A DNA stretch of 64,000 nucleotides from NCBI RefSeq assembly GCF_023055435.1, contig NW_025963846.1:4278001-4342000 (forward strand), read 5' to 3'. Within the stretch, counting starts at the first letter, position 1; each line of letters begins with the position of its first letter. Made by a program: the position numbers and the translations under genes. The notes beneath the pieces were generated by a model that was given only the letters and a program-made list of their open reading frames with translations, did no database searches and was not told where the DNA came from. Positions 12,669 to 63,992 of this stretch are shown here, piece after piece. Source of the stretch: Haliotis rufescens (taxonomy: Eukaryota).

Positions 12669-15600
12669 TCAGCCAACCAGTGTGCCCACCATAGCCGCCA
12701 TAGCCGCTTCCTTCTTGAGGTGCTGCAACATAGGTTAGCATAGGATATATAGATATACGATGACAGACTGAACTCCGAGCTCCAGATAAGCGTTTGGTGT
12801 TGTGGTGTTTTACCCATGCATTTTAAAATTATTGGGTACCAGTAATTCTATCTGGGTATTCAAATTTCTGTTACCCACTAGTTTTTACACATGTGGGTAT
12901 TTAAGTTAAATATTTAAAAACACTATTCATCTAGTCCCTGCAAACTGGTGTCGTGTGGGTTCGAGAGCTTTATAGGACTCAAAAATAATCACGATACTTC
13001 CACAAGAAAGTGTGATGACCAATGATCAAGATGTAACTGTCATCGTGGAGTTTGGCAAGGTTGACGGAATGCCAGTCTATAATTTCAAAATAAGTTGCTG
13101 ATTTGCTAATCGAATACGCAGGGTTACTTGACAATATTTTGATGATACGCACAAGTTTTATTTTTGTAGCGTATCTGTAATGTTCGTTGCTTATTTGATA
13201 CGCTTGGATCTTATTTTACTGCATATTTCTGCATTTCTGATGCGTATTTTACGCAGATACGCAGCTTATCTGGGGCTCCGTGAACTGCTCTCAACATTGT
13301 GTTACAGTTATATGTGGGAGGACGTGACGTTTATCGCTCTGGCGACTTCTACGGATATCAATAGTGCATAACCAGGGCGAATCTGGGATTCGAACCCATG
13401 ACAAGCGATTCCTGGCAGCTTAAGAACCCTTCAGAACGAATTGTGGCACATTAGACAGGGACCATGTTTAAGTAAGTTCACGCNNNNNNNNNNNNNNNNN
13501 NNNNNNNNNNNNNNNNNNNNNNNNNNNNNNNNNNNNNNNNNNNNNNNNNNNNNNNNNNNNNNNNNNNNNNNNNNNNNNNNNNNNNNNNNNNNNNNNNNNN
13601 NNNNNNNNNNNNNNNNNNNNNNNNNNNNNNNACATAAGTGTTTTAGTCAATTGAAGAATACATATTTCATACATTTATCATTATTAGTGTTGGTGTTACA
13701 TGTTACATATTCTATCAATATTACTGAAGGCATTGAGTGAATAAGAACGTAGCAACGGATGCGTTTGAACTCCAAACACAATACAAGATCACACAGAGAA
13801 GCGTTAATGTGAAACAAGACGATGTGGGTTTTGCTTACCTCCTCCACCAGATGGTTGAACTCTTTAGCCTGATCAGCATCGACATCTGAAATTGGAATAT
13901 GAGATATTGTTATCATCTATTGGTCGGTGTTGTCGATGGGATAAGCTGATAAATTTTTAAGCTCCAATGATCGATGCAACGTACACTTGATAACAATATG
14001 ATTGCATTAGGATTCCAATAATTTTAGACATGGACGTTTGTGTTAATAAATAAAAGCTACAAAACCCTTTCCATATTCATAAGAAATCTCTGTCAAAAGC
14101 ATTTTACGATTCCGACTATATCATGAGAATGTGTTTGTGAATCACTATCATATAGTGATGACACAAGGTGGTCGAGAAAAGGTGAGGGTATCCTGCCCTA
14201 CCGGTGGAACCCGTCACAAACAGTTTGAAGATAAGTATTAAGTGGAACAGGGTTATGTCCTGCCTCATCTGGCAAGAAGAACCTGCTGTAACTTTATCAA
14301 CTGGAGGGGGGAGAACTGGATTGACGGATATCAAATTGATATGTGTTTTTTAGTAAGGTTTCTTTGAGACAAAAAGCCAATCTTGAATCAATACCTATAG
14401 TTCATTACATTCTTCTCAAGACCTCTGCAATTCTATTGTATAACGTTTTATGGATTCATGGTGCTTCCCCAGGAGGTGTATCATATGAACGTGAGGGAGA
14501 CTTTGTATTGCTTCTATTGGTGTCATGTGGAGATGTGGAGTTGGAGATGGACCTCTATGGGATCTCTAAAGTAGAGGTGGCCTTTGGTGGTGGTGCTTGC
14601 AGTTGCTCTTATTGCTGCTTTTGTCGTAATAATTTTTGTTGTTGTTGTTAGAAATCCGTGAAGATCCGGGGTATTAGGTCTTCAGCAATCCATGCTTGAC
14701 GTAAAAGGCTGTTTGTCGTAAGAGGCAACTAACGGGATCGGTGGTCAGGCTCGCTGACATGCAAGTCATCGATCCAAGTTGGGTAGATCGATGCTCATGA
14801 TATCAACCACTGTATTGTCTGGTCCAGACTCGATTATTTACAGACCGCCTTCATATAGCTGGAATATTGCTGAGTGCGGCGTTAAACAACAAACAAACAA
14901 ACTGAGAGACATACAAGTAAGCCTATCCACTTACTGGACATTAACAGCAAGACTGCACTGTATCCCTTTGAGGCGATGTATTGGGTGAGTTGATCGTGCT
15001 GCGCGGCGAACATCATCTCGATAAATATCTGCTTGTCGATGTCATTGAGGTCTTCCAAAATCAAGTTGATGATGTGTAGATCCTTCATAAAGCTGAACAA
15101 GTCTTGCTGACTTTGACGTTTCTGTGTATAAAGGAGTATTGTCATTGCAATGTCATTATATATACTACTTAAAATAAGTTAAAGAACACCCGATTCTTTC
15201 ATATTACTATAGTTAACCTGTCATGGCATGGCAGTACATTTTCCAACCGAGTTTCAATAACATATCACCGCTATTAGCTGCAATATTACCGATGCGGCGT
15301 AATAGCAATATTAGCCCACTCATTTCATGGACGCCGGAATATTATTTCATAGAGGTTTCAGGGTGGTTACATAACAGATCGCCGTGACATACCGGTGGCT
15401 GAAATATTGCTGACTGGGGCGTCAACTACAAAACAGAAAGCAAACAAAACCCAATTTCTAAATTTTTAATCCGTCGCTGACTCAGAGATGTGTTGCACAA
15501 TTACAGTTGAACTTCTTACCTTAGATATGGCCCCAGGTGTCGAGAGAATGCCTGGTGTCGTGAGTATGTCAGATGTTGGGGACACAGCATCTACGAACCC

Positions 15601-18600
15601 AGGCCTCAAGTGCTGAAAAGATATACATGTATGATCTTGTTGGAGTGTAGCTATTGTCCCATGCCTCACCAGCCGTTAGGTATCGATATGTTTCTTTTTG
15701 TATCGAGATTATATACATTTTAGCTACAGCAACAAAACCAGGTACTTTTTGGTTTAAAATTTTGCGCCTGAATTTGTCAACAATGACAGTTTGGTATCAG
15801 GCAATGTCTGCAATAACAGTAAGCTATGTTGGTCTCACACTGGGGATTCCGGGCAAGAACAGGTCACAAATAACCTATGCTGGTCTCACACTGGGGATTC
15901 CTGGCAGGAACAGGTCCCCAGTAACCTATGCTGGTCTCACACTGGGGATTCCTGGCAAGAACAGGTCCCAAATAACCTATGCTGGTCTCACACTGGGGAT
16001 TCCGGGCACGAACAGGTCCCCAGTAACCTATGCTGGTCTCACACTGGGGATTCTTGGCAGGAACAGGTCCCAAATAACCTATGCTGGTCTCACACTGGGG
16101 ATTCCTGGCACGAACAGGTCCCCAGTAACCTATGCTGGTCTCACCCTAGGGATTCCGGGCAAGAACAGGTCCCAAATAACCTATGCTGGTCTCACACTGG
16201 GGATTCCGGGCAAGAACAGGTCCCCAGTAACCTATGCTGGTCTCACACTGGGGATTCCGGGCAAGAACAGGTCACAAATAACCTATGCTGGTCTCACACT
16301 GGGGATTCCTGGCACGAACAGGTCCCAAATAACCTATGCTGGTCTCACCCTGGGGATTCCTGGCACGAACAGGTCCCCAGTAACCTATGCTGGTCTCACC
16401 CTAGGGGTTCCGGGCAAGAACAGGTCACAAATAACCTATGCTGGTCTCACCCTAGGGATTCCTGGCAGGAACAGGTCCCCAAATTACCTATGCTGGTCTC
16501 ACGCTGGGCATTCCTGGCAAGAACAGGTCCCAAATAACCTATGCTGGTCTCACACTGGGGATTCCGGGCAAGAACAGGTCCCCAGTAACCTATGCTGGTC
16601 TCACCCTAGGGATTCCGGGCAAGAACAGGTCCCCAGTAACCTATGCTGGTCTCACACTGGGGATTCCGGGCAAGAACAGGTCCCAAATAACCTATGCTGG
16701 TCTCACCCTAGGGATTCCTGGCAAGAACAGGTCCCCAGTAACCAATGCTGGTCTCACCCTAGGGATTCCGGGCAAGAACAGGTGCTCAGTAACCTATGCT
16801 GCTTTTAAGAGACGACTGCATAGATCGGATGGTCATCCTCGATGACTTGAGTGGCTACCAGTATCAGTGTCTGGTCCTCACATGGTTATTTACAGGCCGC
16901 CATCACACCTACATCATTACAACCTTTGACCCTTGTTATTGTGTACCCTAATGCGGAGAATGGTTGTTGCTCGTACTATCAACCACCAGTCAGCATGGAT
17001 ACAGCTGTTTCCAGGAAAACTAATGTCGTTTTATTGAGCATGCAGCTGGAGAGGAATGTTATACCTCAAACTTTCTTGTTCAGCTGCTGTAATCTTTGTA
17101 TTGGGACTGACAATAGCCAGGTATTACTTGAATCAATACCGGACCGATTGTCATTTTTAATGTTCGAAAAAGACATAGTTTTTTTTAATTCTTATTTATA
17201 TTTTTCAGAAAGCCTATGTTATATATTCATCCAATAAGTACACCAGGCCATTTTGAATCTTAAAACAGAAAGAGGAGAAAGCAGAATATATAGGAACACG
17301 TTATAGTTATTTATTACTTGACGTGCTGATCAGATGGTATTAATATATTCAGGTTACTGTGGACAAATCCCACACCCGAATCCTCACAGGGATAAACGGT
17401 ACCAGTGGTTACCGACATGCATACCCGTGAAGATCCGGAGTAGAATAGGTCTTCAGCAACCCATGCTTGCCCTAAAAGGCGACTATGCTTGTCGTAAGAG
17501 GCGACTAACAGGATCGGGTGGTCAGGCTCGCTGACTTGGTTGATGCATGTCATCGATCCCAATTGAGGGGATCGATGCTCATGATATTAATAACTGGATT
17601 GTCTGGTCCAGACTTAGTTATTTACAGACCGCCGTCATATAGACGGAATATTGCTGAGTGCGGCGTTAAACAACAAACGAACGTGGCACTGTAAACTAAT
17701 CTGTGTCCCACCCTGGAAGTTACTTATGCAGTACTTACCGCGGACAAGTACCCCTCTAAGTGAGGAATGTCATCTTCATCCAGAACTGAAAGTAACAGTC
17801 TCCATATAGTCTGTTGGATTACCGCAATAGTAATACTAATAAACTAATGAAGCAAGATTTATATAAAGCCTGGTTTCGATCACAAGGTGCTCAACGGCGC
17901 TCACAATATAAACCAATGGGCAACAGAAAGTATACACTTGAAATTTGGATTTGATCAAGAAATTACAAACGTTATCAAAACGTTACTAGGCTGAAAACAG
18001 TCGCCGAAAACACTGCAAACTTCAGGTCAAAAACACAACTATGATACCCGATCAAATGCATCACCATCGAATAACCATGTCTTGTAAGTTTTTGTCCCTG
18101 AGTATTTTTAAACATGGCGTCATATCCCTACGTCATATCCCAAAGTGGTAAACGTCTGATTCCTTCATCACTTCGGGCTCTCCTCCCACATTAAGCTGAC
18201 AAGCCGCGATATAACTGGAATACTGTTAAAAGCGGCGTTAAACACAACTCACCCACTCACTAACTCGTAAACGTTCATCCGTCTGTAATTGACAACCGGT
18301 TACGTTTTCGTTTGAAACGTTGATACCACTCGGCTCACCCCTATTACGTCATCTCACAGCACATGGAGGAGTCCATTTTGGAACTAGTCTTAGTCACGTG
18401 ACTATCACACGACACGACAGTATCTGACGCAGACTCGCCTCTAACATAAAATGTTAAAAGTCTTCGTATGTAGCTTTTGATTATTATTAGACATACTTTA
18501 GGCTGTTTTCAAAACCGGCCGTCATGTTGTACGAACATTATTAGGCGGGATCCGTCAGTAATTGGAATACGGTGAAATTATCTGATATCACTACACTTGT

Positions 18601-18913
18601 GTTTTCCGTGGTATTAAGGTGGAGGAAAAGGCCGAATGAACCCGAGTGTACACTGATACCTACGGTCAAAGAGTTCGAGAAGCTTGACAAATCCGATTTG
18701 ATCTATTAGAGCAGTCAGTTCGGTCGTTCCTTGCACGGCCGCCGACACCAGGCTGTTGAAGAGAGTCTGTGAATCACCAGGCAACCTCTTGAAGTCGTCA
18801 CTATCCCGTATCTCGTTCAGATAGTCGACGAATAATGACGAGTTGGTGTAGTCGTGATGTTGGTCTGCCACGACGGCCACCACAAGGAGAGCAGTAACGA
18901 GTACAAACTTCAT
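12669..18913 (-). CDS. Secreted two-domain helical pro-protein, paralog A (225 aa, unknown family)
   Basis: Exons 18913-18664, 17785-17739, 15612-15520, 15121-14935, 13885-13839, 12722-12669; all GT-AG, 678 nt in frame. MKFVLVTALLVVAVVA|DQHHDY...DEDDIPHLEGYLSAHL-(S/T/P linker)-KKR|QSQQDLFSFMKDL...HLKKEAAMAAMVGTLVG*. AATAAA at 12629-12624. Homologous to B and C. An N gap lies in the last intron. Confidence 0.88.
13484..13631. other. Assembly gap (N run)
   Basis: Ns. Confidence 1.
13975..14220 (-). mobile_element. Penelope-like element 3' fragment
   Basis: Similar to 23560-23700 (caaaaccctttc.atattcat...aatcactatca.a.agtgatgacac). Confidence 0.55.
14655..14901 (+). mobile_element. Family B retroposon
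   Basis: ccgtgaagatccggggg...gtcgtaagaggc.actaacggg...gcggcgttaaacaacaaacaaac. Confidence 0.85.
15820..16800 (+). repeat. Minisatellite, 51-bp unit, ~19 copies, in an intron of gene A
   Basis: Unit ctggggattccgggcaagaacaggtccccagtaacctatgctggtctcaca; explains ORFs 15654-16808 and 15791-16537. Confidence 0.95.
17423..17682 (+). mobile_element. Family B retroposon, full length
   Basis: acccgtgaagatccggagtagaataggtcttcagcaacccatg...gcggcgttaaacaacaaac. Confidence 0.9.
18140..18265 (+). mobile_element. 5'-truncated SINE family D
   Basis: Matches the 3' half of 39101-39364. Confidence 0.75.
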
Positions 18914-22260: not shown

Positions 22261-22755
22261 GTAGGGTATTTTGGAATTCCAGAAAGCTAAGGGCATCACC
22301 TCACCAGCTGATGGAAGAGATTGTGCCTACTACGCATGAGGAAACGTTGGATGTTTCCAATGCCTTTGACTGTAGGTAATTCTCTGGCTGATAGGCGCGC
22401 TCGTCACGTCGCAGACCCTGGTCGAATCCCTACATGGGTTCAATAGGAAGCCCATCTTGGTCTCCCTGCCGAAATATATCACTGAGCTGCTGGTGTTTTC
22501 ACTTTATTGTCAGTCTATGTACGTACATGCGTACGTGCGTGTGTGCGTGCGTGCGTGTGTGTCCATATGTGACTGTGTGTGTCTGTATTCAGATTAATCG
22601 TAAAAGAAAGGGATCCTGTGTTCATGTCTGATAGAATGATAATCTGGCTAATTTTCAATTAGGCTGGGAAATCAATCTCTGAGTATTTGTTGAAGGAGAG
22701 GGGTATGAGTATTAGTTTAGGTGTATCACGTGCTTGTTAGTTAGTATAACCGTAC

Positions 22756-22802
22756 CCTATTGATCAGCTGATCAAAGCCGTGGGCTTCATCATGGTCAAT
22801 TT
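22756..22802 (-). pseudogene. Orphan 47-nt exon of the secreted-protein family (relic fifth paralog)
   Basis: cag|aa att gac cat gat gaa gcc cac ggc ttt gat cag ctg atc aat agg|gtac = IDHDEAHGFDQLINR, versus gene B exon QIDSDESHGFDLLIMR. Flanked by the same 38-bp minisatellite and by sequence (22600-22705) homologous to the gene B intron at 36770-36865. Confidence 0.8.
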
Positions 22803-22827
22803 CTGCCGCAAAGGTTAAAAAATGTCA

Positions 22828-23180
22828 ACTGCAGGAGGTTCTGGATAGCGCTATACTGAAGAGCAATTGCGGAAGGCTCTGTATAGCGCTATACTGAAGC
22901 ACAACGGGAGAATGTTCCAGATAGCGCTATACTGAAGAGCAACTGCATGAGTTAAGGATAGCGCTATACTGAAGAGCAACTGCATTAGTTCTGGATAGCG
23001 CTATACTGTAGAGCAACTGCGGAAGGTTCTGAATAGCGTTTTAATGAAGAGCAATTGCGGGAAGTTCTGGATAGCGCTATACTGAAAAGAAACGGGGGAA
23101 GGTACCGGATAGCGTTATACTGAAGAGCAACGGGAGGAGTTTCCGGATAGCGCAATATTGAAGAGCAACAGAGGAGGTTC
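22828..23180. repeat. 38-bp minisatellite (ggatagcgctatactgaagagcaact...)
   Basis: Tandem units; the same family occurs in the equivalent introns of genes B and C. Confidence 0.9.
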
Positions 23181-23539
23181 TAGTTAAGGAGGCTGTAACG
23201 TTTATAAATAGTTATCCGATTTATTTTTTCAAAACAAGACATTTTTATCTATTTAATCTTTAGTAAAGAGAATGTCTTTTAACGCATCAGTCAGCACTAT
23301 TTCAACTTCATTACGACGGCTTCTTAATTACTGAGTATGGGCCAGACAACCGAGGATTAACAGGATGAACAAAACTTGTCATCACGGGAAGGATGGCGCC
23401 AATAAGCCAGGTCGCCGGGCTTTGGAAATATCTGTGAGTGGGTTGGACGTGCGAAGGAGCTAGGGCAAGTCAGAGTGTTCTGCTGGTGTTATTACGACAG
23501 CTTTTTCTTATCTTCCACGTAGATCGTATTAAGTTGAAG

Positions 23540-24375
23540 AGGTGACAATTATCTAAATACAAACGACAAAAACCCTTTCTATATTCATTACAAATCTTTG
23601 CCAAAAGTAGACTCAATTGTACTATTCAGATTATATCATGAGTATGTGTTTACGAATCACTATCAAACAGTGATGACACCAGGTGTTTGCGAAAAGGTGC
23701 ACTTGTCACAAACACATGCAAAGGAAAGTCAAGTGTACACCTTCAAAAACATGGGAACATATGTGGAAATGTTCTCCACATGTCTACCATAATGCTTTTC
23801 AAAAGCTTTACTGAAGCCTTGAATGTTGTAACCCTGACTAATCAACTTTTGAGCAAGCGTCGTATGATACTCTTTGAAATCTTGGTGGACAAAGCAGGCT
23901 CGGATGCACCTCAAACGTTGTGAAATGAAAGGCTGGAATAGCGCTCGACATGAAAGGGAAAGTTGACTATTGGAAATGCAATCTTGTTGAGACTTTTTTG
24001 TCACTATATTTCTTTTTGCATAGATTGAGAAATGAAACAGACGGGGCGGTCTCAATAGTCACCTTTATATCTTGTTTAGATGGTTAAAATCCGTAGAAGG
24101 GGATTGGGTATTTGACTGTTATTGAACAAAATAAGATCTTTTAGGAAAACGTCTTTGCAAAATTCGAGGAAAAATTCCGATGGATATGCTAAGAGAAACA
24201 GATCAGCAAAAGGGGAACACTATAATTATTTGTGCCCATGGGGATGCCTTTGTCTTGCTTGAATGTTTTACCCACAAAGTTAAAATACATGTTATCAACG
24301 AGGAAATCTGACATTTCACATATTGTTTTTCAGTAAACTTCAGATGACCTTTACTATCAGTTTTGACAAAGTGCC
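23540..24375 (-). mobile_element. Decayed Penelope-like retroelement (RT and C-terminal region)
   Basis: ISQRLRCIRAC..HQDFKEYHTTLAQKLISQGY...KAFEKHYGRH; upstream FLVDNMYF...GIPMG motif on the minus strand. Confidence 0.75.
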
Positions 24376-24377
24376 TA

Positions 24378-24553
24378 GTGAGTGAGTGAGTGAGTGAGTA
24401 TGATTTTACGCCGCTTTTAGCAATATTCCAGCAATATCACGACAGGGGACACCAGAAATGGGCTTCACACATTGTACCCATGTCGGGAATCGAACCCGGG
24501 TCTTCGGCGTGACGAGCGAACGATTTAACCAGTAGGCTACCCGACCGCCCCCC
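24378..24553 (-). mobile_element. SINE family A, full length
   Basis: A/B boxes, ACTC tail, TSD-like caaagtg.c.ag. Confidence 0.9.
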
Positions 24554-24627
24554 AAAGTGTCCAGAACCTTTTGAAGATAGATATGCAACTATATTTATGG
24601 TCACCTCGTTTAGTATCATTTTCTTCG

Positions 24628-24818
24628 ACGCACTCAGCAAACTATTCCAGCTGTATGACGGTGGCCTGTAAATAATCGAGTCTGGGACAGACAGTCCAGT
24701 GATTGACACCATGAGCATCGATCTAGGCAATTGGGATACGATGACATGCATCAACCAAGTCAGCAAGCCTGACCACCCGATCCCATTAGTCGCCTCTTAC
24801 GACAAGCATAGTCTGAAG
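24628..24818 (-). mobile_element. Family B retroposon, partial
   Basis: Similarity to 17423-17682. Confidence 0.8.
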
Positions 24819-25449
24819 ATATCTCATACATGCGTGCTGAATTTCAACTTCATGTGGATGTTGGAGGGGTTTATAAAGAAACAGGTTGTCATATTTGTCA
24901 TTTGGTCAGTTTCAGTAATGTTTGTAAACTCTATATCAACGGATATCGGGTTATTATGACGTTATATATACACATACTATTTATACCATACAGGTTATCA
25001 TAATTATATTATTAATATGTGCTTACTAAATTTGTAGACAGACAGACACTCTTTCATATCTCTTTTTCCCAACATTTTGGGGACAAGCTAGAGTGAACAA
25101 GGCATCAATTAAGCATGATGCTTTACAACATGGCTTATTAACAGTACTGTGACAAGTCATTATCTCTGTCTTTCCTACCTGTAGCTTCTAACAGATCGTA
25201 AAATAGATTCATACATTATATTAAGTTACATTAAGTTACAAGATGACACGCAAGCGTTAATATGTCACAGTTTTGTACGCATGTGACTGGTTTGACAAAA
25301 GAAAGCATCTATGGGTACATATCAACCCCCTAAAATGACTGTGGAATATTTGCATTGTTCAACTTGTTTTGTTGTTATATTTCATTTGGAGTACACATAA
25401 AATCAGCATTCAGAATATAGTTCACATACAGTCTTAACTAAATATAAGA

Positions 25450-30435: not shown

Positions 30436-31182
30436 GTACCATCTTGATTTCTTACTTTCCTTACTCCTTGAAATATTACACTGTGACTTTGATTTTTAAT
30501 ATATTTTATGTCGAAACGTATTATGTTATTTACAGTTGCCCTCTAAAACGATATTAATTGTTTTCATTTTTGGGTTATTACAAATTACCAAATGTAATGT
30601 ATGTCTTGTGGATTTTCTGAACACAGTATATTTGATGGCGAAAAGAAGGTTTTTCACCTCATAATGAAAGCTGAGAAACAGAGACTTGATCTTTCATTTT
30701 GTGTAAAAGTGTATTCACACTGCTTGAAATAGACTTAACTAACAATGCGTGGATTACAATACGACATCGATTCCTGTAGTACCGTTATGGAAAGCTAGAT
30801 GATGTTTGAGGGAGCGGGAGCTATCAAGATACTTTTAAACATGTCGCTTTTCACTCGGATAATGTGATGTGTCATTTTGTCAGTTTTTGCGTGGAACACT
30901 TTCAAATTTTTATTTTGGGTCTTAAAACCACCGTTTACCGCCTGGACAGCCATTGCCAAGATAAAACATGTAATTTGTGACAACATTCGCCTCATTCGCG
31001 TCATGTTTGTCTTTGATGTCTATTTGAGTTAGGTATGTCCCAGCCGCATCAAGGCAAGGGACATGAATGATGGACCGTCTCTAAAGTGGGATTCGCTTGC
31101 CTGACGAACATAGCAGTCATTCCTTTCTAAAACCCAACACGGGCTTCACGTGCGATACAGCAAACTCTTTTTCTAATTCAGT

Positions 31183-34100
31183 ATGATGAAGTTCCTGATT
31201 GTTGCTTTGGTAGCAATGACTGCCGTCATTGCCGACCACCATCACGACTACAAAGACCCTTCTAAATTCGCCGACTGGCTGAAGGATGTGCAGAAGAGCC
31301 ACGAGTTCGCTCACATGACGCCAGAAGATAAGCTCCTCTACAGTCAACTCACCCAGGCTGCCGAACAGGGAAGTGCCGCCCTCACAACCTTCATCGATAG
31401 CCAGACCTTCGACAAGATTGTTGGCCTCATTGATCGTATGTTTATATGTTTGACCATGTGTATGCTCATGGACACTAATTACACACAACCATGGCTCAGA
31501 TGGACACTTATTACACACAACCATGGCTCAGATGGACACTTATTACACACAACCATGGCTCAGATCGACACTAATTACACACTACCCTGGCTCAGATGGA
31601 CACTTATTACACACAACCATGGCTCAGATGGACACTTATTACACGAAACCATGGCTCAGATGGACACTAATTACACACTACCCTGGCTCAGATGGACACT
31701 AATTACACACAACCATGGCTCAGATGGACACTTATTACACACAACCATGGCTCAGATATGGACACTTATTTCACACAACCATGGCTCAGATGGACACTAA
31801 TTACACACTACCCTGGCTCAGATGGACACTAATTACACACAACCATGGCTCAGAGGGACACTTATTACACACAACCATGGCTCAGATGGACACTGATTAC
31901 ACACTACCCTGGCTCAGATGGACACTAATTACACACAACCATGGCTCAGATGGACACTTATTACACACAACCATGGCTCAGATGGACACTTATTACACAC
32001 TACCCCGGCTCAGATGGACACTTAATACACACAACCATGGCTCAGATGGACACTAATTACACACAACCATGTCTCAGATATGGACACTAATTACACACAA
32101 CCATGGCTCAGATATGGACACTAATTACACACAACCATGGCTCAGATATGGACACTTATTTCACACAACCATGGCTCAGATATGGACACTAATAACACAC
32201 TACAATGGCTCAGATGGACACTAATTACACACAACCATGGCTCAGATGGACACTTATTACACACAACCATGGCTCAGATGGACACTTATTACACACAACC
32301 ATTGCTCAGATATGGGCACTTATTACACACAACCATGGCTCAGATGGACACTTATTACACGAAACCATGGCTCAGATGGACACTTAATAGACACAAACAT
32401 GGCTCAGATGGACACTAATTACACACAACCATGGCTCAGATGGACACTTATTACACACAACCATGGCTCAGATGGACACTGATTACACACAACCATGGCT
32501 CTGATATGGACACTTATTACACACAACCATGGCTCAGATGGACACTGATTACACACAACCATGGCTCAGATGGACACTTATTACACACAACCATGGCTCA
32601 GATGGACACTAATTACACACAACCATGGCTCAGATGGACACTTATTACACACAACCATGGCTCAGATGGACACTAATTACACACAACCATGGCTCAGATG
32701 GACACTTATTACACACAACCATGGCTCAGATGGACACTTATTACACACAACCATGGCTCAGATGGACACTTATTACACACAACCATGGCTCAGATGGACA
32801 CTTATTACACACAACCATGGCTCAGATGGACACTAATTACACACAACCATGGCTCAGATGGACACTTATTACACACAACCATGGCTCAGATGGACACTAA
32901 TTACACACAACCATGGCTCAGATGGACACTTATTACACACAACCATGGCTCAGATGGACACTGATTACACACAACCATGGCTCTGATATGGACACTTATT
33001 ACACACAACCATGGCTCAGATGGACACTGATTACACACAACCATGGCTCAGATATGGACACTAATTACACACAACCATGGCTCAGATGGACACTAATTAC
33101 ACACAACCATGGCTCAGATGGACACTTATTACACACAACCATGGCTCAGATGGACACTAATTACACACAACCATGGCTCAGATGGACACTTATTACACAC
33201 AACCATGGCTCAGATGGACACTGATTACACACAACCATGGCTCTGATATGGACACTTATTACACACAACCATGGCTCAGATGGACACTGATTACACACAA
33301 CCATGGCTCAGATATGGACACTAATTACACACAACCATGGCTCAGATGGACACTGATTACACACAACCATGGCTCAGATCGACACTAATTACACACAACC
33401 TTGTCTCAGATGGACACTGATTACACACAACCTTGTCTCAGATGGACAATAATTACACACAACCATGTCTCTGATCGACACTAATTACACACAACCTTGT
33501 CTCAGATGGACACTAATTACACACAACCATGGCTCTGATCGACACTAATTACACACAACCTTGTATCAGATGGACACTGATTACACACAACAATGGCTCA
33601 GATATGGACACTAATTACACACAACCTTGTCTCAGATGGACACTGATTACACACAACAATGGCTCAGATATGGACACTAATTACACACAACCATGTCTCT
33701 GATCGACACTAATTACACACAACCTTGTCTCAGATGGACACTAATTACACACAACCATGTCTCTGATCGACACTAATTACACACAACCTTGGCTCAGATG
33801 GACACTAATTACACACAACCATGGCTCTGATCGACACTAATTACACACAACCTTGTATCAGATGGACACTAATTTCAACGCCGATATAAGACCGAACGTG
33901 CGTTCGGGGCAATAGATTATTGTCCTCCTTTAAAACATTTTACCCATATTGAATATTTATATATGCACAGCAATGAATGTTATTATCAGTTCGGATGACC
34001 GACAATAGGCATTTGACAGGTAAACGTTTGTTAGACAAATAATCCCCCCAAACATATCAAACTCCAGATAATAAGATCAAACTCCAGAGAATAAGTATCG

Positions 34101-35517: not shown

Positions 35518-35556
<39 letters not shown>

Positions 35557-38499: not shown

Positions 38500-38667
38500 C
38501 AGTAAACTACGGTTATAACGAACTTAAAGGGACCACTAATTTTAGTTCGTTGTAACCGTAGTTCGTTATAAACATATATACACCATATATACAGCAAATG
38601 GCTTGGACCATAAAAAACAGTTCCGCCAGTTCGTTATAAGCGTGTTCGTTATAAACGTAGTTTACTG
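38500..38667. mobile_element. Tc1/mariner-pogo type MITE nested in the transposon
   Basis: TIR cagtaaactacggttataacg / cgttataaacgtagtttactg; TA TSD. Confidence 0.85.
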
Positions 38668-39097: not shown

Positions 39098-39364
39098 GAA
39101 GGGGGCACGGGTGGCCCAGTCGTCTAAGGCGCCGCGATTCACTGTGCAGAGTTGCGTCCCTTGGGCACGCAAGAACCCTATGATTGTGGGTTCGAATCCC
39201 GGTTCGCCCTAATTATGTCAGCACCATACCCGTGCTCGTGGGTTTCACCGAAGTGGTAAACGTCTGAGACCTGCATCACTTCGGGCTTTCCTCCCACATC
39301 AAGCTGACACGCTGTGATATAACTGGAATACTGTTAAAAGCGGCGTTAAACCCAACTCACTCAT
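39098..39364 (+). mobile_element. Full-length tRNA-derived SINE family D
   Basis: A box gtggcccagtcgtctaaggcg, B box gggttcgaatccc, ACTC tail, 11-bp TSD tgttgttgcaa. Confidence 0.9.
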
Positions 39365-43205: not shown

Positions 43206-43548
43206 GACAGATTCAGGATCTCCGACACAAGTGACATCTGATGAACACAATGACCAGAGTAAAACCAATCTTTATACACATTTTATTCACAACTGCCAAT
43301 GGTATATCTGCAAAGAAAAGATTTATATCGAATTAAACATTTGAATAAATATTCATTAGTGGCGTTTTATACTTTTAAATTCCATAACACCATCATACAA
43401 GCACAATATAATTTCTTCCACATTCTGATTATAATTTCATTTCCCGTATTTATCTAACATCTAATCTAATCTAATGACATAATACCATTATAATGGATGT
43501 AGGCACGGCTGTAGGTAAAATTATTTTTAGTATTCTGACTGAGCATTA

Positions 43549-44171
43549 CACCGTAGAAAATGTGTTTAGATCCTAAACACAAACTTAAACATGTTCCTTG
43601 TCCCATAATTTTGATATGTTTAGGTCTTTACGTGTGTAGGATTGAGTTAAACAGCGAAACGTGTATAGGGTCTAAATGTGTATACCTCCCTTGAAATTCA
43701 TTGTAGGTAATTAAAAGAGGTGATCTCTCCATGTTTTTATTAACGTTTAATGGGGATACAGAGGTACATTTGTATATCAGCATTGTACCAAGTTCTGTGG
43801 ACGCCCTGGTGGTATATGTGTTATGCAAGTGTCTGTAAACCTGATCTGCACTTCTAATTTCAATATGAATGTATAATAATATACATCTTATCTATATTTG
43901 TTTTATTGCCTAATAATATGATCTTTATTGAAACAGGTTTAAAATTCGAAACATGTTTTCACTTTGAAATTCGAAATATGTTTCAAGTCTAAAAATGTAG
44001 GTGGTGTTTAGCCTGAGGCGGTAGCTCATTTCATGTATGTAGACCTAAATACGTTTACGTAGAACACACCACATGTGTATTCCGTGTAGGATTTAAACAC
44101 ATTCCTAATCATGTTAAGATCTTGACATGTCTGTTGTCCGTTTTTATGTTCTAAACACAGTTTTTACAGTG
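43549..44171. mobile_element. Non-autonomous DNA transposon, CAC(T)GTA termini, TA TSD
   Basis: caccgtagaaaatgtgtttaga...tctaaacacagtttttacagtg; empty site in the gene B arm (~37400). Confidence 0.8.
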
Positions 44172-44444
44172 TATAATTGCAGATTCATGATGATTGGCTA
44201 GTTCGTCCAAAGTGTTCTCATCGTCACGATATGGCTTAAAAAATTGCCGATGTGACGTTAAATATTAAATATCAACTCACTCACTCCAAATTGTTCTATG
44301 GTCTTCATTGTTAGTGAGGAGACCCCTAGCAAAGTGACGTCACATGAATGCAAGCAACCGATGATGATGTCATATTGATCATGACATCACAACCGATTTT
44401 ATGCGCCGTCGTTCTAATAATAAACCAACTACGTTGTTCAGCGC

Positions 44445-44615
44445 CAATATTCCAGCTATATGACGGAGGTAAATGACGGAGGCCAGACAATCCAGTGATT
44501 GATATCATGAGCATCAATTCACGCAAATGGGATACGATGACATGCATGAACCAAGTCAGAGAGCCTGACCACCCGATCCCGTTAGTCCTATCCTACCCCG
44601 GATCTTCAGGGGTCA
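44445..44615 (-). mobile_element. Family B retroposon, internally deleted
   Basis: Similarity to the family B consensus. Confidence 0.75.
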
Positions 44616-44758
44616 ACTACGCTTGAGATGAGGAAAGCCATTATTCACATGTTTTCATTAAAAAAAAGACTATGGGTAGTGCAGGAAGTAACCCACTTGC
44701 CAGGAGTTATTTACTGTGCCCCGTGAATTAATACTGAAAAGGCTCCTTACATACTTAA

Positions 44759-45173
44759 CATTCGTCACCACTCGCCCCTTTCCGTAACCTGCAAGAAGAC
44801 TCGTCCTCCTATCGATGAATATTATGTGCGAAAATACGACAAACCAATCAGAATGCGCATATGATTTCAAGTTCTTCGTCAAAGAATCCCTCAGAAATAA
44901 TTTTTGAATTTACATATGTCTTGCATCTAAAAATATACCAAAGACACAGTTAAATGTGTTCAATCATACTGTATAATTCCGCACGCCCCGGTGAGCTTTA
45001 AATTGCATCTGAAATAATGTGGGAAATCTGGGGAAAATATGTGAACCATGTGTGACAGTTGTTTTAGGTATGCCCGTTTGCGCTAAGACGGAACCCGGTC
45101 GCAAAAATGGCCACAAGAGGGGCAGGAGCCGCTATTCGGCTTGTCCCGGAATAACACGAGTTGGTCACGAATG
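44759..45173. mobile_element. MITE with CATT...AATG TIRs and 10-bp TSD
   Basis: TIR cattcgtcaccactcg / cgagttggtcacgaatg; TSD acatacttaa; second copy at 59251-59702. Confidence 0.85.
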
Positions 45174-45794
45174 ACATACTTAATTCACTCGGGACAGAAA
45201 ATTCGTAATTCCTCCTAACTTGTAAGTTGTTTCCTAGATATACAGTGTGCCACTCAACGCGCCATACATTTGAACGAGCCAGAAACTTACGATCATGGGT
45301 TCAAACCCCATATTCGCAGTGATTGTCTTTCTATGTGTATCACTACCATAGCCGTGCTCGAGTGTTTCACTCAGTTGTTAACTACGAAAAACTGCATCTC
45401 TTGGCCGATTGCCGTCACACAACTGAGATAATATTCAGAGCAGCATTAAACCATCCTCGCTCACTCCATTGTCGAATAATATTGGTTTTCCTTGAAGGTT
45501 CACACGAAATGTCATACAAAAGATGTTTTTTTTAATGTGACCGTGCTCATATTATTATTACCAGCAATATGCAGGTGATCTTTCCATCATCGGTTTTATT
45601 GTTTCTGACCCATAGCAACTTGACGTCACATGAACGCACTGTCGCAAGCAATAGAAGATAATATATTGTTCATGACGTCACAACCGATTGACTAGTACAA
45701 AATCTCATACCAAGCATCTGTTCTCATAATATGACCTTAATATTATTACCAGTAGTATGTAGGATGCAGGAGATCTTTCCATCAGCGGGACTGT

Positions 45795-48700
45795 TCAAAC
45801 CACAACTGGAGCAGCAGTGCTGGCCATTGGGGCAGCCGTGCTGGCCATAACTGGAGCAGGTGTGCTGACCATTGGAGCAACCGTGCTGTCCATAACTGGA
45901 GCAGGTGTGCTGACAACGATGGCGCCGACAGTAGTTTTCATTTGTGACATCGCAGCCTCATGTTCCAGATGCTGAAATATGGGAAAGGATACAAAGGATT
46001 TAGGGGCTGGCAGTCCCACCCAAATCCACTTTCTTTCTATTCTAATTCATATGTTTCTATTCTTCCAAAGCGTTAGAGTCATATGGAATACACACAAAAT
46101 GATCTGTAAAAGCTTTCTTTAAGCAGGCTCGTCTAAGGTTCCTTTGCACAATGATTCTGTATTCAAATTAAGACAATAAAGATAAGAAACTGGAATTTCA
46201 AATTTCATAAAAAAACTGTTTTAATATATTTTGCATTGTGTCAGAGGTGAAGGTTTTACAGTTTAGCTGTGTGTATAAACGAGTGGAATATGATTATTAC
46301 ACGCGATGAGGACAGTAATGTCACATTGTATTCTAATTATAGAACTGTATTTGGCGCCCACGATTATGACACACGCCCTATCCCCCGATCCCACAGAGGC
46401 GCACTGGCAAATTCACTGCTCCAATGTGGCACTGCTGCAATACGCTTACAGACAAGACGTTAAAGCAACCTCCCAATTTAAGAACATGTTTGAACTGTAC
46501 AGAGACTCAGTATCCTATAATTCCGTATCGAGTTACCAGCTTGTTTCACATATTCTGTTTACCATTTTTATTGTTATATTTTGGATGTGACAACCTGTCT
46601 GTGTGTCCTTACCCTCATGAGCAGCTTATCAAAGTTGCGAGTTTGATCTTTATCAATTTCTGAAACAAAAAAATTGAAAATAATTAATCAATTGACAAAG
46701 ACATCATTCCTCTTCAAAGTCACATTCAGGAGGTTCCGGGTAGCGTTACACTGAAGAGCAATTAGTAAAAGGTTTGGGATAGCGCTCTACTAAAGAGCAA
46801 TGGGAAGAGGTTTGGGATAGCGCTATACTAAAGAGCAATGGGAAGAGGTTTGGGATAGCGCTATACAAAAGAGCAATGGGAAGAGGTTTGGGGAAGCGTT
46901 ACACTTAAGAGCAATGGGAAGAGGTTTGGGATAGCGCTATACTAAAGAGCAATGGGTAGAGGTTTGGGATAGTGGTATACTAAAGAGCAATGGGAAGAGG
47001 TTTGGGATAGCGCTATACTAAAGAGCAATGGGAAGAGGTTTGGGATAGCGCTATACTAAGAGCAATGGGAAGAGGTTTGAGATAGCGGTATACTAAAGAG
47101 CAATGGGAAGAGGTTGGTATAGCGCTATACTAAAGAGCAATGGCAAGAGGTCCCGGATACTGAAGAGTTTGTTTGCTCTTTAACGCCACACTCGGCAGTA
47201 TTCCAGCTATATGACTGCACTTTACACTGACGAGTAAAGGGTGGAAGCCGTGTCATTGTGTATAGCGCTATACTGAAGAGTAACTGCAATAGTTTCCGGG
47301 TACCGTTATACTGAAGGATAGAGGAAGGAAGTTCCGGACAGAGTAAAGAGAGCAAGCCGAATCATAGTGTTCTACTGGTGTCAATGTGACATAACAAGAG
47401 TAGGGAGATGCGCGTTAGTTCTCTTCTTAAACACAGAGGCTTTTAATTTGATGAGGTGGCAATTCTAAATCTCATTATAAGACCATGGCTAGATTAGTAG
47501 ATATTGGGTATTCCAAACAGCTGTATACATTAGTTGTGCATCATATACCTACGTGACATGAGGTCCAGGACGGGGCCGTAGCCCTTATTGTCAATGTATT
47601 GGGTGAGCGTGTCGTGTTCAGCGGCGTACATGATCTCCAGGAAGACCCGCATATCTGAATGGGAGAGATGTTCCTCCACCTTGTGCATAAGGTGAAGATC
47701 CCTAAGGAAGCTGAACAGGTCTGAGCCACTCTGTCGCTTCTGATTAACGAAAGAAAACATCTATACTTTTTTGTCCTTTTTTAAATCTAAAACAATATAT
47801 GAGTGAATTAGTTCAGTTTAAAGGCAAACTAGCCTCAAGATAATTGCCAGGCCAAGCATTTATGTGACTGCTTCCCCCCTCCCCTCCGCGCCCCCAGTGA
47901 GTGAGTGAGGTTGGTTTGAACAGTATTTCAGTAATGTCTCAGTTATGTTACATATACTTCTTTGGTATGAAAAACTTATTTTTGTCATTTAATGACTTAT
48001 TATAACCACTAAAACTTAGGTTTGTGCCCATATACTCACGACAGGTGCGGTTGTTGTTGTGCCCTGCAGGTGCTGAAAGAGATTAGTATTGACAATATCA
48101 TTGCAGATATAAATACAAATTATTTCAATGTCTTACGATCTTAATGATAGGCAGCAAAACAAGCACAACGGTACTTACAGCGGCTAGGTAACCTTCAAAG
48201 TGGGGAATGTCGTCCTTGTCCAGATCTGAGGACATATCAAACATACGGGCTACATTTCAACTTCAGCAAGATATATATCAGCGGATATCGAGCTATTATA
48301 ACATTTCGAAGACATATTTTATGGATGATATATAGGTTGTTATGAAAAGTGTCAAAGAACAACGATGGAGGTAGCTGAACACAGGTAAGATGGTCATTAT
48401 ACAAATGTGAGACACTGCCGAAAACCATAGACTATTTTAAGAACGCGTGTTCACTATAGTTTTTGGCAAGCGAAATGTGTCGGCAGATAATGAAGGCTAA
48501 TTATTCTCTGGTATTGACGTTAGATATTTTGGGAACAATTTTTCGGAATGATTTAATCAGTTTTCTAGGACTGCCGATTGTTCCTACATGAAAGAGCATA
48601 TACATGGACATAAATGTAGACATACGATCAATGAGGCCAATAATCTTGTCGAAGGTCTGGCTATTGATGAAGGTTGTGAGGGCGGCACTTCCCTGTTCGG

Positions 48701-48878
48701 CAGCCTGGATGAGTTGACTGTAGAGAAGCTGATTTTCTGGCGTCATGTGAGCGAACTCGTGGCTCTTCTGCACATCCTTCAGCCAGCCGGCGAATTTAGA
48801 AGGGTCTTTGTAGTCGTGGTGGTCGTTGGCAATGACCGCAGTCATTGCTACCAAAGTAACAATCAGGAGATTCATCAT
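45795..48878 (-). CDS. Secreted two-domain helical pro-protein, paralog C (247 aa, with mucin-like C-terminal repeats)
   Basis: Exons 48878-48626, 48225-48179, 48072-48040, 47739-47553, 46659-46613, 45971-45795; GT-AG, 744 nt in frame; close paralog of B; tail STPAPVMDSTVAPMVSTPAPVMASTAAPMASTAAPVVV*. Confidence 0.9.
46735..47340. repeat. 38-bp minisatellite (gggatagcgctatactaaagagcaatgggaagaggttt), homogenised, in a gene C intron
   Basis: Direct tandem repetition. Confidence 0.93.
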
Positions 48879-49259
48879 ACTGAAGGAGGAAAAGAGTTTC
48901 CTGTATCGCATGTGAAGTCAGTATTTGGTATTAAAAGGAATGGCTTCAAAGTGGTTAAACTGTGAGACAGGCAGGTTCGAATCCCACGTTGGTGAACTCC
49001 ATCATTGCCTTGATGTGACTGGAACATAACTCAAACCGAAATCAAAGTCAGACAGATCTAAATTGTTGACGAATGTTGTCATACAGTACGTGTTTACGTG
49101 TTTAGTTTGGGCAATGGTTGTCCTGGCGATTATTGTTTGAAAGTGTTTCGCATCCTGCAGTTGCTCACACTGGCAATGACAAGAAATCGAAAATCCTTTC
49201 GCATCACACTATCCCAGAGAGGAGAGAGGTGCATAAATCGTGCCTCATTTACCTAGTTA

Positions 49260-49760
49260 TTCTGGCCAAGAAGCTTCATGTATATCGATATATTTGATGA
49301 CCGGCTACAGTTCAATAATGATCAAATCGCCATTTCTCTTCCGCTGATTTACCCACCTGAACTAGAAATTAAAGAGACAAGTGACACCACCTGATCTGTT
49401 TCATCTTTCAATCTCTGCACGAATGTATGATAAGAAGGATGACTTCATCTTTCCAAAAGTCATCTTTCCTTAATGTCGAGCCTTTTCCAGCAGCTACAGG
49501 CCTAGGTGGCAGCGTTTTACCCCGTAGGTGTGGTAGATTGAGGTACAATCGTTTCTACGAAGATTTCAAATAGCGTCACACGACGCTTGCTCAAACGCCT
49601 TTTGATCAGGGACATAACATTCAAGGCCTCAGAGAAAGATTTCAAAATGCTTAATGCTAGACTTATGGGGAAAATATCCAAATGCCAAAGATGATGTCTG
49701 ATGCAGGTTTTTGTGACTGGTGCCTACGGTGGAATGGGGCACGCTCACCTTTTCTTATAT
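49260..49760 (+). mobile_element. Decayed Penelope-like RT fragment
   Basis: Remnants of Y.DD, IYPPELEIKET and YDKKDDFIF; similar to 23540-24375. Confidence 0.65.
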
Positions 49761-50126
49761 GTAAATGGTTTTTTCAACACTGACTGAAACAAAATGGACC
49801 AAAAAAAACCCCAAAAACAAACAATATCACATCACACAATTCTAGAGAAAAGAGGGATAATACAAAGGTATCTTCAGAGCTTAGGCTACTTCAAACATCA
49901 TCTGGCTTGTCACAATGTACTGCAGGAATGAAACTCGTACACAATATCCAATTCCTGACAGTGTTAGTTCAAACAAACTAGATTACGAACATCCAAATAA
50001 TACAGATATATTGATAGTGAATCTTCAGTAACCCCGATATATATTTTTTTCGACTTAATGTACACTACATACATACACTGAATAGTCTGCTTTTTTTAGG
50101 TAAGGAGCGTGAGAAAACAAACAGTA

Positions 50127-62755: not shown

Positions 62756-62821
<66 letters not shown>

Positions 62822-62837: not shown

Positions 62838-62886
62838 ATAAAGATGGGGGATGACGTGTGATTTGTATAGTTGATCTGTTTCCAGA

Positions 62887-63992
62887 ATGAGGCTGAGCGT
62901 GATAGTCCTGAGCGTCCTCTGTGTTGCCTGCGCTGCTACCGTGCTGGAGCAGAAGCTTCATGAGTTTGTAAGTGGGCATGTGTTGGATCAACTGCCGCAG
63001 AATGAGAGGATCCTGCTGGCGCAGCTGGTGGCTACAGCTGAAAGAAATGAGCTGAAGGAGTTCCTGGACTTAGTGGGGCCATTACCTGTCTTCCAGCTCA
63101 TCTCAGGTAGGGCCATTACCAGTCTCGCAGCTCATCTTAGACTGTCATAACCAGTCTCGCAGCTCATCTTAGACTGTCATTACCAACTTACAGCTCATCT
63201 CAGTTAGTGTCATTACCAACTTACAGCTCATCTCAGGTAGGGTCATTACCAGTCTCGCAGCTCATCTTAGGCTGTCATTACCAACTTACAGCTCATCTCA
63301 GTTAGGGTCATTACCAGTCTCGCAGCTCATCTTAGACTGTCATTACCAACTTACAGCTCATCTCAGTTAGGGTCATTACCAGTCTCGCAGCTCATCTTAG
63401 ACTGTCATTACCAACTTACAGCTCATCTCAGTTAGGGTCATTACCAACTTACAGCTCATCTCAGTTAGGGTCATTACCAACTTACAACTCATCTGAGTTA
63501 GAGTCATTACCAACTTACACATCATCTCAGTTAGGGCCATTACCAACTTACAACTCATTTCAGTTAGAGTCATTACCAACTTACAACTCATTTCAGTTAG
63601 AGTCATTACCAACTTACAACTCATCTGAGTTAGGGTCATTACCAACTTACAACTCATCTGAGTTAGGGTCATTACCAACTTACAACTCATCTGAGTTAGA
63701 GTCATTACCAACTTACAACTCATCTGAGTTAGGGTCATTACCAACTTACAGCTCATCTCAGTTAGGGTCATTACCAACTTACAACTCATCTCAGTTACCA
63801 TTATCTTGTGGTTCATCTCAAGGTAGGGCCTCTTATTTATGGAGAACGTGTAATATTACCAACTTACAAGGCCTAGTTTATAGTTAAGATATGATCGTTA
63901 TATTTCTACACGATGACTGCATTATTCCATGTTTCGTCTTCACAGATCTGCCAGCAAAGCAAATTCACAACCTGACTCGCTATCTCAGCCAG
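62887..63992 (+). CDS. Secreted helical-domain protein, divergent paralog D (3'-partial)
   Basis: Exons 62887-63106 and 63946-63992 (47 nt), GT-AG, same phases as A-C. MRLSVIVLSVLCVACA|ATVLEQKLHEF...LPQNERILLAQLVATAERNELKEFLDLVGPLPVFQLISDLPAKQIHNLTRYLSQ. Confidence 0.82.
63077..63800 (+). repeat. 33-bp minisatellite starting at the gene D exon/intron junction
   Basis: Unit gtcattaccaacttacagctcatctcagttagg, ~22 copies. Confidence 0.93.

What the first reader, a model, noticed from the sequence alone, without database searches (positions are those of the whole stretch)
12669..63992. Cluster of unrecognised secreted pro-proteins built from a repeated ~80-aa Cys-free helical domain
Seen: four spliced genes (A -, B +, C -, D + partial) plus an orphan exon. 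Each has a signal peptide, and each ATG lies 1-6 nt after a splice acceptor. All domains share the pattern L/M-[PST]-x4-[LIV]-[LF]-x2-[LIM]-x2-[AT]A-x3-5-L-x2-[FYL][IL]-x3-[GT]-[FYP]-x2-[VIL]-x2-L-x3-[LIFV]-x4-5...HL. The ORF track shows only fragments, so the family is easy to miss. Synonymous changes between B and C (e.g. agt/agc, ctg/ctt, gac/gat in the KRQ exon) indicate purifying selection. Inference: a lineage-specific secretory system (mucus/adhesive, shell matrix, pheromone or defence). I cannot assign it to a known family.
Basis: partly seen in the sequence, partly recalled or inferred. Interest (0 to 1): 0.9.

Follow-up and report, generated by a model that had tools for sequence, protein, structure and literature searches.

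The report
Mollusc secreted helical-domain gene cluster
This stretch of red abalone DNA holds four expressed, neighbouring genes (plus one decayed copy) of a mollusc-wide secreted protein family built from a roughly 90-residue helical domain that matches no described family or solved fold and whose function is unknown.

Summary
The window (Haliotis rufescens, contig C68) carries genes A(-), B(+), C(-) and D(+, last exon outside the window), plus a decayed fifth copy that explains the "orphan exon". Each domain is encoded by a three-exon module: a large exon ending in phase 1, a 47-nt exon and a short "His-Leu" exon. Spliced contigs from public runs that are probably RNA (library type not on record) confirm all five introns of gene C at the predicted bases. 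Gene B's exons e1, e2 and e4 translate 100% identical to RefSeq LOC124144257 ("uncharacterized protein"); I checked the other three by eye. The three assembly gaps lie in an intron or between genes and were not filled.

A profile search of 1.84 billion proteins found 71 hits at E<=0.001. Three look spurious, and every named hit is from a gastropod or bivalve. No Pfam, PDB-sequence or fold match is convincing, although the single-domain AlphaFold model is confident (core pLDDT above 90). Two abalone orthologues are labelled "perlucin 2" in databases. That is a misnomer: they have no C-type lectin domain and no cysteine.

A dibasic site, often GKR, lies between domains in 47 of 60 linkers. This suggests convertase cleavage into acidic, His-rich units of about 10-14 kDa. 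Function is untested. The genes are already annotated, but the family is undescribed. Interest is moderate.

The parts
12669..18913 (-). Gene A: six coding exons (18913..18664, 17785..17739, 15612..15520, 15121..14935, 13885..13839, 12722..12669). It encodes a signal peptide, domain 1, a KKR site and domain 2. Assembly gap 13484-13631 lies in intron 5.
   Evidence: Exon-by-exon match to H. cracherodii XP_071083132 (P0001).
31183..37208 (+). Gene B (RefSeq LOC124144257, 213 aa): exons 31183..31435, 34208..34254, 34389..34418, 34986..35172, 36133..36179, 37131..37208. A 2.4-kb 32-bp minisatellite lies in intron 1.
   Evidence: P0090 is identical over exons e1, e2 and e4, and the rest agrees by eye. 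B-type exon 3 letters appear in spliced contigs (table 5c).
45795..48878 (-). Gene C: exons 48878..48626, 48225..48179, 48072..48040, 47739..47553, 46659..46613, 45971..45795. It has a C-terminal Thr/Pro/Ala/Val/Met-rich tail.
   Evidence: All five introns are confirmed by spliced contigs in up to four runs. Match to H. cracherodii P0087.
62887..63992 (+). Gene D (single-domain type): exon 1 62887..63106, 47-nt exon 63946..63992, and a third exon about 1.9 kb beyond the window end.
   Evidence: Match to H. rubra XP_046542639 (P0016, 117 aa).
22617..24895 (-). Decayed fifth copy. It keeps the end of intron 1 (24895-24812), has exon 2 replaced by a SINE-like insert, and keeps the intron-4 minisatellite, an intact 47-nt exon (22802..22756) and part of intron 5.
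30770..49929 (.). Inverted segmental duplication that made B and C (tail to tail). The arms are 68-93% identical, introns included, and are centred near 42.2 kb.

Best explanation
This is a tandem cluster of paralogous genes of an undescribed, mollusc-wide family of secreted proteins.

Shown:
- Each gene encodes a signal peptide followed by one domain (D) or two domains (A, B, C).
- The domain has a conserved core of about 76 residues (units of about 90-100 residues with flanks). It is acidic (pI about 4.3-5.3), His-rich, almost Cys-free and predicted to form a bundle of five or six helices.
- Each domain is encoded by the same three-exon module.
- Gene C is spliced as predicted, and its contigs are deep in the runs laid.

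Inferred:
- In the secretory pathway a furin/PC-type convertase cuts the conserved (G)K-R site between domains.
- This releases single-domain proteins of about 10-14 kDa. The second would start with Gln (possible pyroglutamate). The first would end in an amidated residue where Gly precedes KR.
- The released units act as soluble extracellular binding or carrier proteins rather than as enzymes.
- The ligand is unknown. Metal ions and small hydrophobic molecules are the best candidates.

The cluster grew by local duplication: an inverted B/C pair and one dead copy. The 47-nt exon of the second domain changes fastest.
For: - Gene models and expression.
- Family range: 71 hits at E<=0.001 among 1.84e9 representatives; every hit that carries a source name is a mollusc.
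- About 10 genes in this genome, on three contigs.
- Domain model pLDDT 81.5, core above 90, pTM 0.69, all helical.
- Composition: Cys 0.0%, His 5.9%, D+E 15.3% against K+R 6.6%. pI and mass of the units.
- Dibasic site in 47 of 60 linkers across gastropods and bivalves, and GKR in many Haliotis paralogues.
- The 47-nt exon is kept in paralogues that share only about 25% identity.
- First-domain and later-domain types each hold both gastropods and bivalves in a domain tree (short alignment, supports not examined).
Against: - Cleavage at KR has not been observed; it is read from sequence alone.
- I have no tissue data, no proteome hit and no ligand evidence.
- The runs are only presumed to be RNA and are Logan contigs, so depth is a poor measure of expression.
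- Mytilus linkers have a single Arg rather than a pair.
- No fold relative points to a binding function.
- A test of whether domain 1 and domain 2 bind each other gave no verdict.
Confidence: 0.6

Rival explanations
1. The released domains are signalling molecules (protein hormones or water-borne pheromones). They would be made like neuropeptide precursors, with dibasic cleavage, GKR amidation signals and acidic spacers.
For: GKR and KR sites, an N-terminal Gln after the cut, and poly-Asp/Ser spacers between seven repeats in Plakobranchus. A fast-changing 47-nt exon.
Against: Units of 90-100 residues with a conserved hydrophobic core are large for peptide signals. Contig depth in the thousands in several runs is unusual for a hormone. 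No receptor or tissue evidence exists.
Confidence: 0.15
2. They are structural components of a secreted matrix (mucus or the organic shell matrix). The helical domains would be joined to O-glycosylated Thr/Pro/Ala-rich tails or to Asp-rich spacers.
For: Mucin-like tails in C and in H. rubra and H. asinina paralogues. Acidic domains and poly-Asp linkers. The database label 'perlucin 2' may hint at a mantle or shell cDNA source.
Against: B and A lack the tail. Shell-less sacoglossan slugs have the largest versions. No paper or peptide match was found. The 'perlucin' label has no sequence basis.
Confidence: 0.15
3. They are true perlucins (C-type lectin nacre proteins), as the names of two orthologues say.
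For: UniProt and GenBank names 'Putative perlucin 2' (H. discus discus B6RAY9) and 'Perlucin 2' (H. diversicolor G5CT92).
Against: No Lectin_C match and no cysteine at all. The predicted fold is all helical. A published perlucin tree notes that 'Haliotis perlucin 2' groups apart from mollusc perlucins (PMC11591584).
Confidence: 0.02
4. They are distant members of a known domain of unknown function (DUF4476, DUF4473) or of MgtE_N-like helical repeats.
For: UniRef names one Mytilus homologue 'DUF4476 domain-containing protein'. Language-model features put DUF4473 first, at 0.80. Weak MgtE_N hits recur: 5 of 15 members at E of 0.02 or weaker, plus 21.3 bits for P0007 (E 0.0004) and 26.1 bits against a cut-off of 25.9 for the seven-repeat P0003, which has no single significant stretch.
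Against: PF14771 and PF14747 hit none of the family loci or proteins. A score of 0.80 is reached by a third of shuffled proteins. The MgtE structure matches poorly (TM 0.26). These intracellular or bacterial families do not fit a secreted animal protein.
Confidence: 0.08

Closest known systems
Nematode polyprotein allergens/antigens (NPA, e.g. ABA-1); from established knowledge, not tested by alignment here
   Same: Secreted precursors made of tandem small helical, nearly Cys-free units separated by regularly spaced basic convertase sites and released as separate proteins. Copy number varies between species.
   Different: No sequence match to any solved chain, and no ABA-1-type structure among the best fold matches. 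The units here are smaller (about 90 against about 130 residues). The site is KR or GKR rather than RxKR. Lipid binding is untested.
Insect allergen repeat (Pfam PF06757, Bla g 1 type)
   Same: Secreted, Cys-free helical repeats of about 100 residues that occur in tandem. The spacing of hydrophobic residues is superficially similar.
   Different: No Pfam match at E<=10 in any member tested. No Bla g 1 structure appears in the fold lists.
'Perlucin 2' database entries of Haliotis discus discus (B6RAY9) and H. diversicolor (G5CT92)
   Same: These are orthologues of genes B/C, 59-66% identical to the H. asinina query, with the same two-domain layout and KR site.
   Different: The name is wrong. 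Perlucin is a C-type lectin with disulfides, and these proteins have neither.
RefSeq 'uncharacterized protein' models of Haliotis rufescens, rubra, asinina and cracherodii
   Same: The same genes or their orthologues. LOC124144257 is gene B.
   Different: The annotation gives no family, domain or function. The repeat structure, the exon module and the spread across molluscs are not recorded there.

Membership tests
Perlucin (C-type lectin nacre protein) | C-type lectin domain (Pfam Lectin_C) with conserved disulfide cysteines | tested here: not met
   No Lectin_C hit for P0089, P0093, P0090 or P0087 at E<=0.1. No cysteines in P0090, P0087 or P0001. All-helical models.
DUF4476 (PF14771) | Match to the Pfam profile at or above 22.5 bits | tested here: not met
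   No hit at E<=10 in the Mytilus protein that UniRef names this way, nor in 9 other members. A genome-wide six-frame search gives no hit at the family loci.
DUF4473 (PF14747) | Match to the Pfam profile at or above 25.9 bits | tested here: not met
   The genome-wide search gives one unrelated hit at 17.4 bits. It is never listed in the Pfam scans. The only link is a language-model score of 0.80.
Insect allergen repeat (PF06757) | Match to the Pfam profile, and the Bla g 1-type helical capsule fold | tested here: not met
   No Pfam hit. Absent from the Foldseek and VIA-align lists.
Nematode polyprotein allergen (NPA) | Sequence or fold similarity to ABA-1-type units | tested here: not met
Nematode polyprotein allergen (NPA) | Tandem helical units separated by conserved basic cleavage sites | tested here: met
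   47 of 60 inter-domain linkers carry [KR][KR], with one to seven units per protein. This is an analogy of layout, not membership.
Nematode polyprotein allergen (NPA) | Binding of fatty acids or retinoids | not testable with these tools
   Needs recombinant protein and ligand assays.
MgtE_N (PF03448) | Match at or above 25.9 bits with a significant single stretch | tested here: not met
   In the two-domain set, 5 of 15 members match at E 0.02 or weaker. Other members: P0007 21.3 bits (E 0.0004), P0016 13.5 bits, and the seven-repeat P0003 at 26.1 bits summed with no significant stretch. The MgtE structure matches at TM 0.26.
Proprotein-convertase substrates | Signal peptide plus a conserved dibasic site in an exposed linker | tested here: met
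   The linker has low pLDDT (residues 104-110 of the two-domain model).
Proprotein-convertase substrates | Cleavage observed in vivo | not testable with these tools
   Needs proteomics or N-terminal sequencing.

The most novel reading that the evidence does not exclude
The family could be a molluscan counterpart of the nematode polyprotein carriers: abundant secreted precursors cut into small helical ligand-carrying units. The abalone A/B/C subfamily may have added an N-terminal copper/nickel-binding (ATCUN, NH2-X-X-His) site. In all ten Haliotis A/B/C-type sequences whose N-termini I read, His sits at position 3 after the predicted signal cleavage (DHH, DQH, NDH, NSH, DNH, DSH, DDH). This would make them extracellular copper-handling proteins in an animal whose blood pigment depends on copper.
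Probability: 0.12. Interest if true: 0.7.

Novelty: new variant of a known kind. Interest (0 to 1): 0.45.

Why it matters
Molluscs have many abundant secreted proteins of unknown role. This family is conserved across gastropods and bivalves, has a confident predicted fold without known relatives, has no Pfam entry, and carries a misleading 'perlucin 2' label in two databases.

Defining the domain and correcting the label would improve mollusc genome annotation. The family also makes a clean case for studying exon-module duplication, convertase processing and fast change in one small exon.

If the units prove to carry metals or lipids, that would be a new carrier system in animals of economic importance (abalone, scallops, mussels, oysters).

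Tried and rejected
- **Pfam:** scans of the window exons and of about 35 family proteins gave no family above its cut-off. The one exception is P0003, where the summed scores of seven repeats pass for NADPH_Ox (31.6 against 27) and just pass for MgtE_N (26.1 against 25.9), with no single significant stretch in either. I read both as repeat artefacts.
- **PDB sequences:** a family profile against all PDB sequences gave nothing below E 0.1.
- **ESM Atlas:** no usable hit for P0002. For P0036 the only lead was DUF4473 at 0.80, and it failed the profile test.
- **DUF4476:** the label on a Mytilus homologue was not reproduced.
- **Domain 1 with domain 2 of gene B (complex prediction):** no verdict, score 0.01. 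This counts neither for nor against binding.
- **Literature:** searches by accession, by the 'perlucin 2' name and by peptide words found no characterisation.
- **5' leader:** the 28 loose letters at 48881 in run X6 are not in the window at up to 3 mismatches, so the 5' exon is unresolved.
- **Spliced models:** I searched exons by reference and used full-length database proteins returned by the searches, including gene B's own RefSeq product.
Full report
**What is in the window**

The ORF list and a self-comparison show seven stop-free stretches that share one domain. Three of them follow a hydrophobic N-terminal signal sequence in genes A, B and C, and one does so in gene D. Three more start with K-R-Q. 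Reading the DNA around them gives a regular structure. Each domain is encoded by three exons:
- a large exon that ends one base into a codon,
- a 47-nt exon that restores the frame,
- a short exon that begins His-Leu in A, B and C.

Genes A (minus strand, 18913 to 12669), B (plus, 31183 to 37208) and C (minus, 48878 to 45795) each have two such modules, so six coding exons. Gene D (plus, from 62887) has one module, and its third exon lies about 1.9 kb beyond the window end. All borders are AG/GT.

**The assembly gaps**

Gap 13484-13631 lies inside intron 5 of gene A. Gap 52449-52610 lies between C and D. Gap 62438-62579 lies about 300 bp upstream of D's start codon. No reading frame in my models crosses a gap. 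I did not fill them or look them up.

**Independent support for the models**

I laid Logan contigs of four public runs from four studies on 45400-50400. The runs hold only the exonic share of the words and are probably RNA, but their library type is not on record.

Joints with CT..AC ends (GT..AG on the minus strand) fall exactly at 48626|48225, 48179|48072, 48040|47739, 47553|46659 and 46613|45971. These are all five predicted introns of C. Contig depths are in the thousands. Letters of B's own third exon appear between joints in the same contigs, so B is probably transcribed too.

A later protein search returned P0090, RefSeq "uncharacterized protein LOC124144257 [Haliotis rufescens]", on a contig of 35,286,876 bases, which is the length of this window's contig. 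Its sequence equals the translation of B's exons e1, e2 and e4 at 100%, and the three short exons agree by eye. So the genome is red abalone and B's model equals the RefSeq model. A, C and D match RefSeq proteins of H. cracherodii, H. asinina and H. rubra exon by exon.

*The "orphan exon".* The exon at 22802..22756 (minus) is intact, but it belongs to a decayed copy. The end of intron 1, the intron-4 minisatellite and part of intron 5 are still recognisable between 24895 and 22617. Exon 2 has been replaced by a SINE-like insert.

*Origin of B and C.* They are the two arms of an inverted duplication that includes the introns.

*The AG before each ATG.* It is there. Whether it is used is open. 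One run has a loose end exactly at 48881, another has a contig that runs unspliced to 49363, and the run closest to this genome has no depth beyond about 48906. A RefSeq isoform of a paralogue on contig C235 does join a 5' exon at the equivalent place.

*Selection between B and C*. Counts are small.

| Part | dN/dS | Note |
|---|---|---|
| KRQ exon | 0.13 | 9.5 synonymous against 5.5 replacement changes |
| Exon 1 | 0.94 | dS only 0.06, which suggests recent conversion |
| Second 47-nt exon | 1.24 | all seven changed codons are replacements |
| All exons | 0.50 | |

*"Cys-free".* This holds for A, B and C. D's two cysteines are in its signal peptide. Two paralogues elsewhere in the genome have two cysteines in the domain.

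**The family**

A profile of the seven large exons was searched against 1.84 billion representative proteins. It found 71 at E<=0.001, 25 at E<=1e-10 and 7 at E<=1e-30. Three weak hits look spurious: a repetitive protein, a PPR-like protein and a 2430-residue protein.

All hits that carry a source name are molluscs:
- Gastropods: Haliotis (four species), Gigantopelta, Littorina, Batillaria, Aplysia, Elysia, Plakobranchus.
- Bivalves: Mizuhopecten, Pecten, Ylistrum, Mytilus, Saccostrea, Pinctada, Mya, Potamilus.

One entry filed under a gregarine parasite of Littorina differs from the Littorina saxatilis protein by a single residue. It is probably host contamination. All are "uncharacterized" or "hypothetical", with three exceptions discussed below.

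Within the red abalone genome the profile finds about ten genes: the four here, one or two on C235 and five on C334. The 47-nt exon is kept in paralogues that share only about a quarter of their residues with A-D.

An iterative domain search over the collected proteins gives 153 domains in 93 proteins, with one to seven per protein. Its composition is 14% Leu, 5.9% His, no Cys, and twice as many acidic as basic residues.

In a quick tree of domains, first domains and later domains form two groups, and each group contains both gastropods and bivalves. This suggests that the two-domain layout is old and that the seven-repeat slug proteins grew from the second type. The alignment is short and I did not examine branch supports, so this is suggestive only.

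**What it is not**

- No Pfam family reaches its cut-off on the exons or on full-length relatives. The only exception is summed repeat scores in the seven-repeat slug protein, with no single significant stretch.
- A family profile finds nothing among all PDB sequences.
- The two-domain AlphaFold model has pLDDT 71.5, and the linker between domains and both termini are below 50.
- The single-domain model, built on 44 sequences, is confident: pLDDT 81.5, core blocks 87-94, pTM 0.69, and five or six helices.

Three labels or leads were tested and failed:
- **"Perlucin 2".** This is the name of the H. discus discus and H. diversicolor orthologues. They have no C-type lectin domain and no cysteine. 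A 2024 perlucin paper notes that "Haliotis perlucin 2" falls outside mollusc perlucins in its tree (PMC11591584).
- **"DUF4476".** This is UniRef's name for one Mytilus homologue. PF14771 hits neither that protein nor the abalone loci.
- **DUF4473.** This lead came from language-model features, at a score that a third of shuffled proteins reach. It failed the profile test.

**How it most likely works**

The signal peptide and the absence of any membrane segment or retention signal point to secretion. This is inference from sequence.

Between domains, 47 of 60 linkers carry a pair of basic residues just before the next domain. This holds in both gastropods and bivalves. Most exceptions are either models in which adjacent domain envelopes overlap (Batillaria and three others) or cases where the pair fell inside my domain boundary. 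Mytilus has a single Arg.

In many Haliotis paralogues, including gene B, the site reads G-K-R, the classical cleavage-plus-amidation signal. The residue after the cut is Gln. The linker is the low-confidence part of the two-domain model.

I therefore take convertase cleavage into single-domain, acidic units of about 10-14 kDa as the most likely maturation. It is inferred, not observed.

The layout is that of the nematode polyprotein allergens: tandem small helical units released at basic sites. I draw that comparison from general knowledge. It is an analogy of design, because no sequence or fold link was found.

What the units do is unknown. I favour a soluble binding or carrier role because the domain is small, well packed, has no catalytic-looking conserved polar residues and is probably abundant. 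The candidate ligands are guesses.

One pattern deserves a test. In all ten Haliotis A/B/C-type sequences whose N-termini I read, the third residue after the predicted signal cleavage is His while the first two vary. That is the ATCUN copper/nickel site, if cleavage is where the -3/-1 rule puts it. I could not run a signal-peptide predictor.

**Verdict**

The family is real, expressed, old within molluscs and undescribed as a family. The genes themselves are already in RefSeq, and function remains open.

I rate it a new variant of a known kind (secreted tandem-domain pro-proteins) and of moderate interest.

**Limits**

- The runs are coded, so no tissue can be named.
- Joined spliced models of the window were not sent to any search or fold tool. 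Exons were searched by reference, and database proteins were used for folding.

Noticed in passing
L018:5587-7076 (G000:C334, about 64081587-64083076): In a paralogue on another contig the 47-nt exon has been amplified into a 45-bp in-frame tandem array of about 30 copies (VSTGETHFLNTYLSA...). Each copy is flanked by AG and GT. It could be a long repeat-coding exon or a run of alternative exons.
   Followed up: no
window 31468-33874: A 32-bp minisatellite of 74 copies fills most of intron 1 of gene B. Gene C lacks it at the same place. It gives many overlapping spurious ORFs (MAQMDTYYTQPWLRW...).
   Followed up: partly
window 15820-16801; 46730-47151 and 22826-23181; 63090-63797; 57170-58182: Further minisatellites: 51 bp in intron 3 of A; 38 bp in intron 4 of C, with its counterpart in the decayed copy; 33 bp in intron 1 of D; 22 bp between genes.
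   Followed up: partly
window 47070-47236: A short stretch in intron 4 of C has contig depth of 14,000-34,000 in all four runs, with many loose ends (GGCGGTCTGTAAATAAT...). It looks like a very abundant, transcribed SINE-like element. Copies occur elsewhere in the window, for example near 17500, 24700 and 44400.
   Followed up: no
window 54746-55138 (-): The ORF has a sub-threshold match to the Tc3-type transposase HTH domain (PF01498, E 4e-5, 24.2 bits against a cut-off of 31.5). It is probably a Tc1/mariner remnant between genes C and D.
   Followed up: partly
window 23729-24055 (-) and 61544-61882 (-): Two ORFs share a motif (…GYNIQG.SKAF..(H/F)YGRHVE.I…) and have no Pfam match. They are probably copies of an unclassified repeat element.
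   Followed up: no
P0008 / P0075 (not in the window): A protein filed in EukProt under the gregarine Digyalum oweni differs by one residue from the Littorina saxatilis family member (same 90% cluster). This is likely host (snail gut) contamination of the parasite's transcriptome, and a weak hint of gut expression of the family.
   Followed up: no
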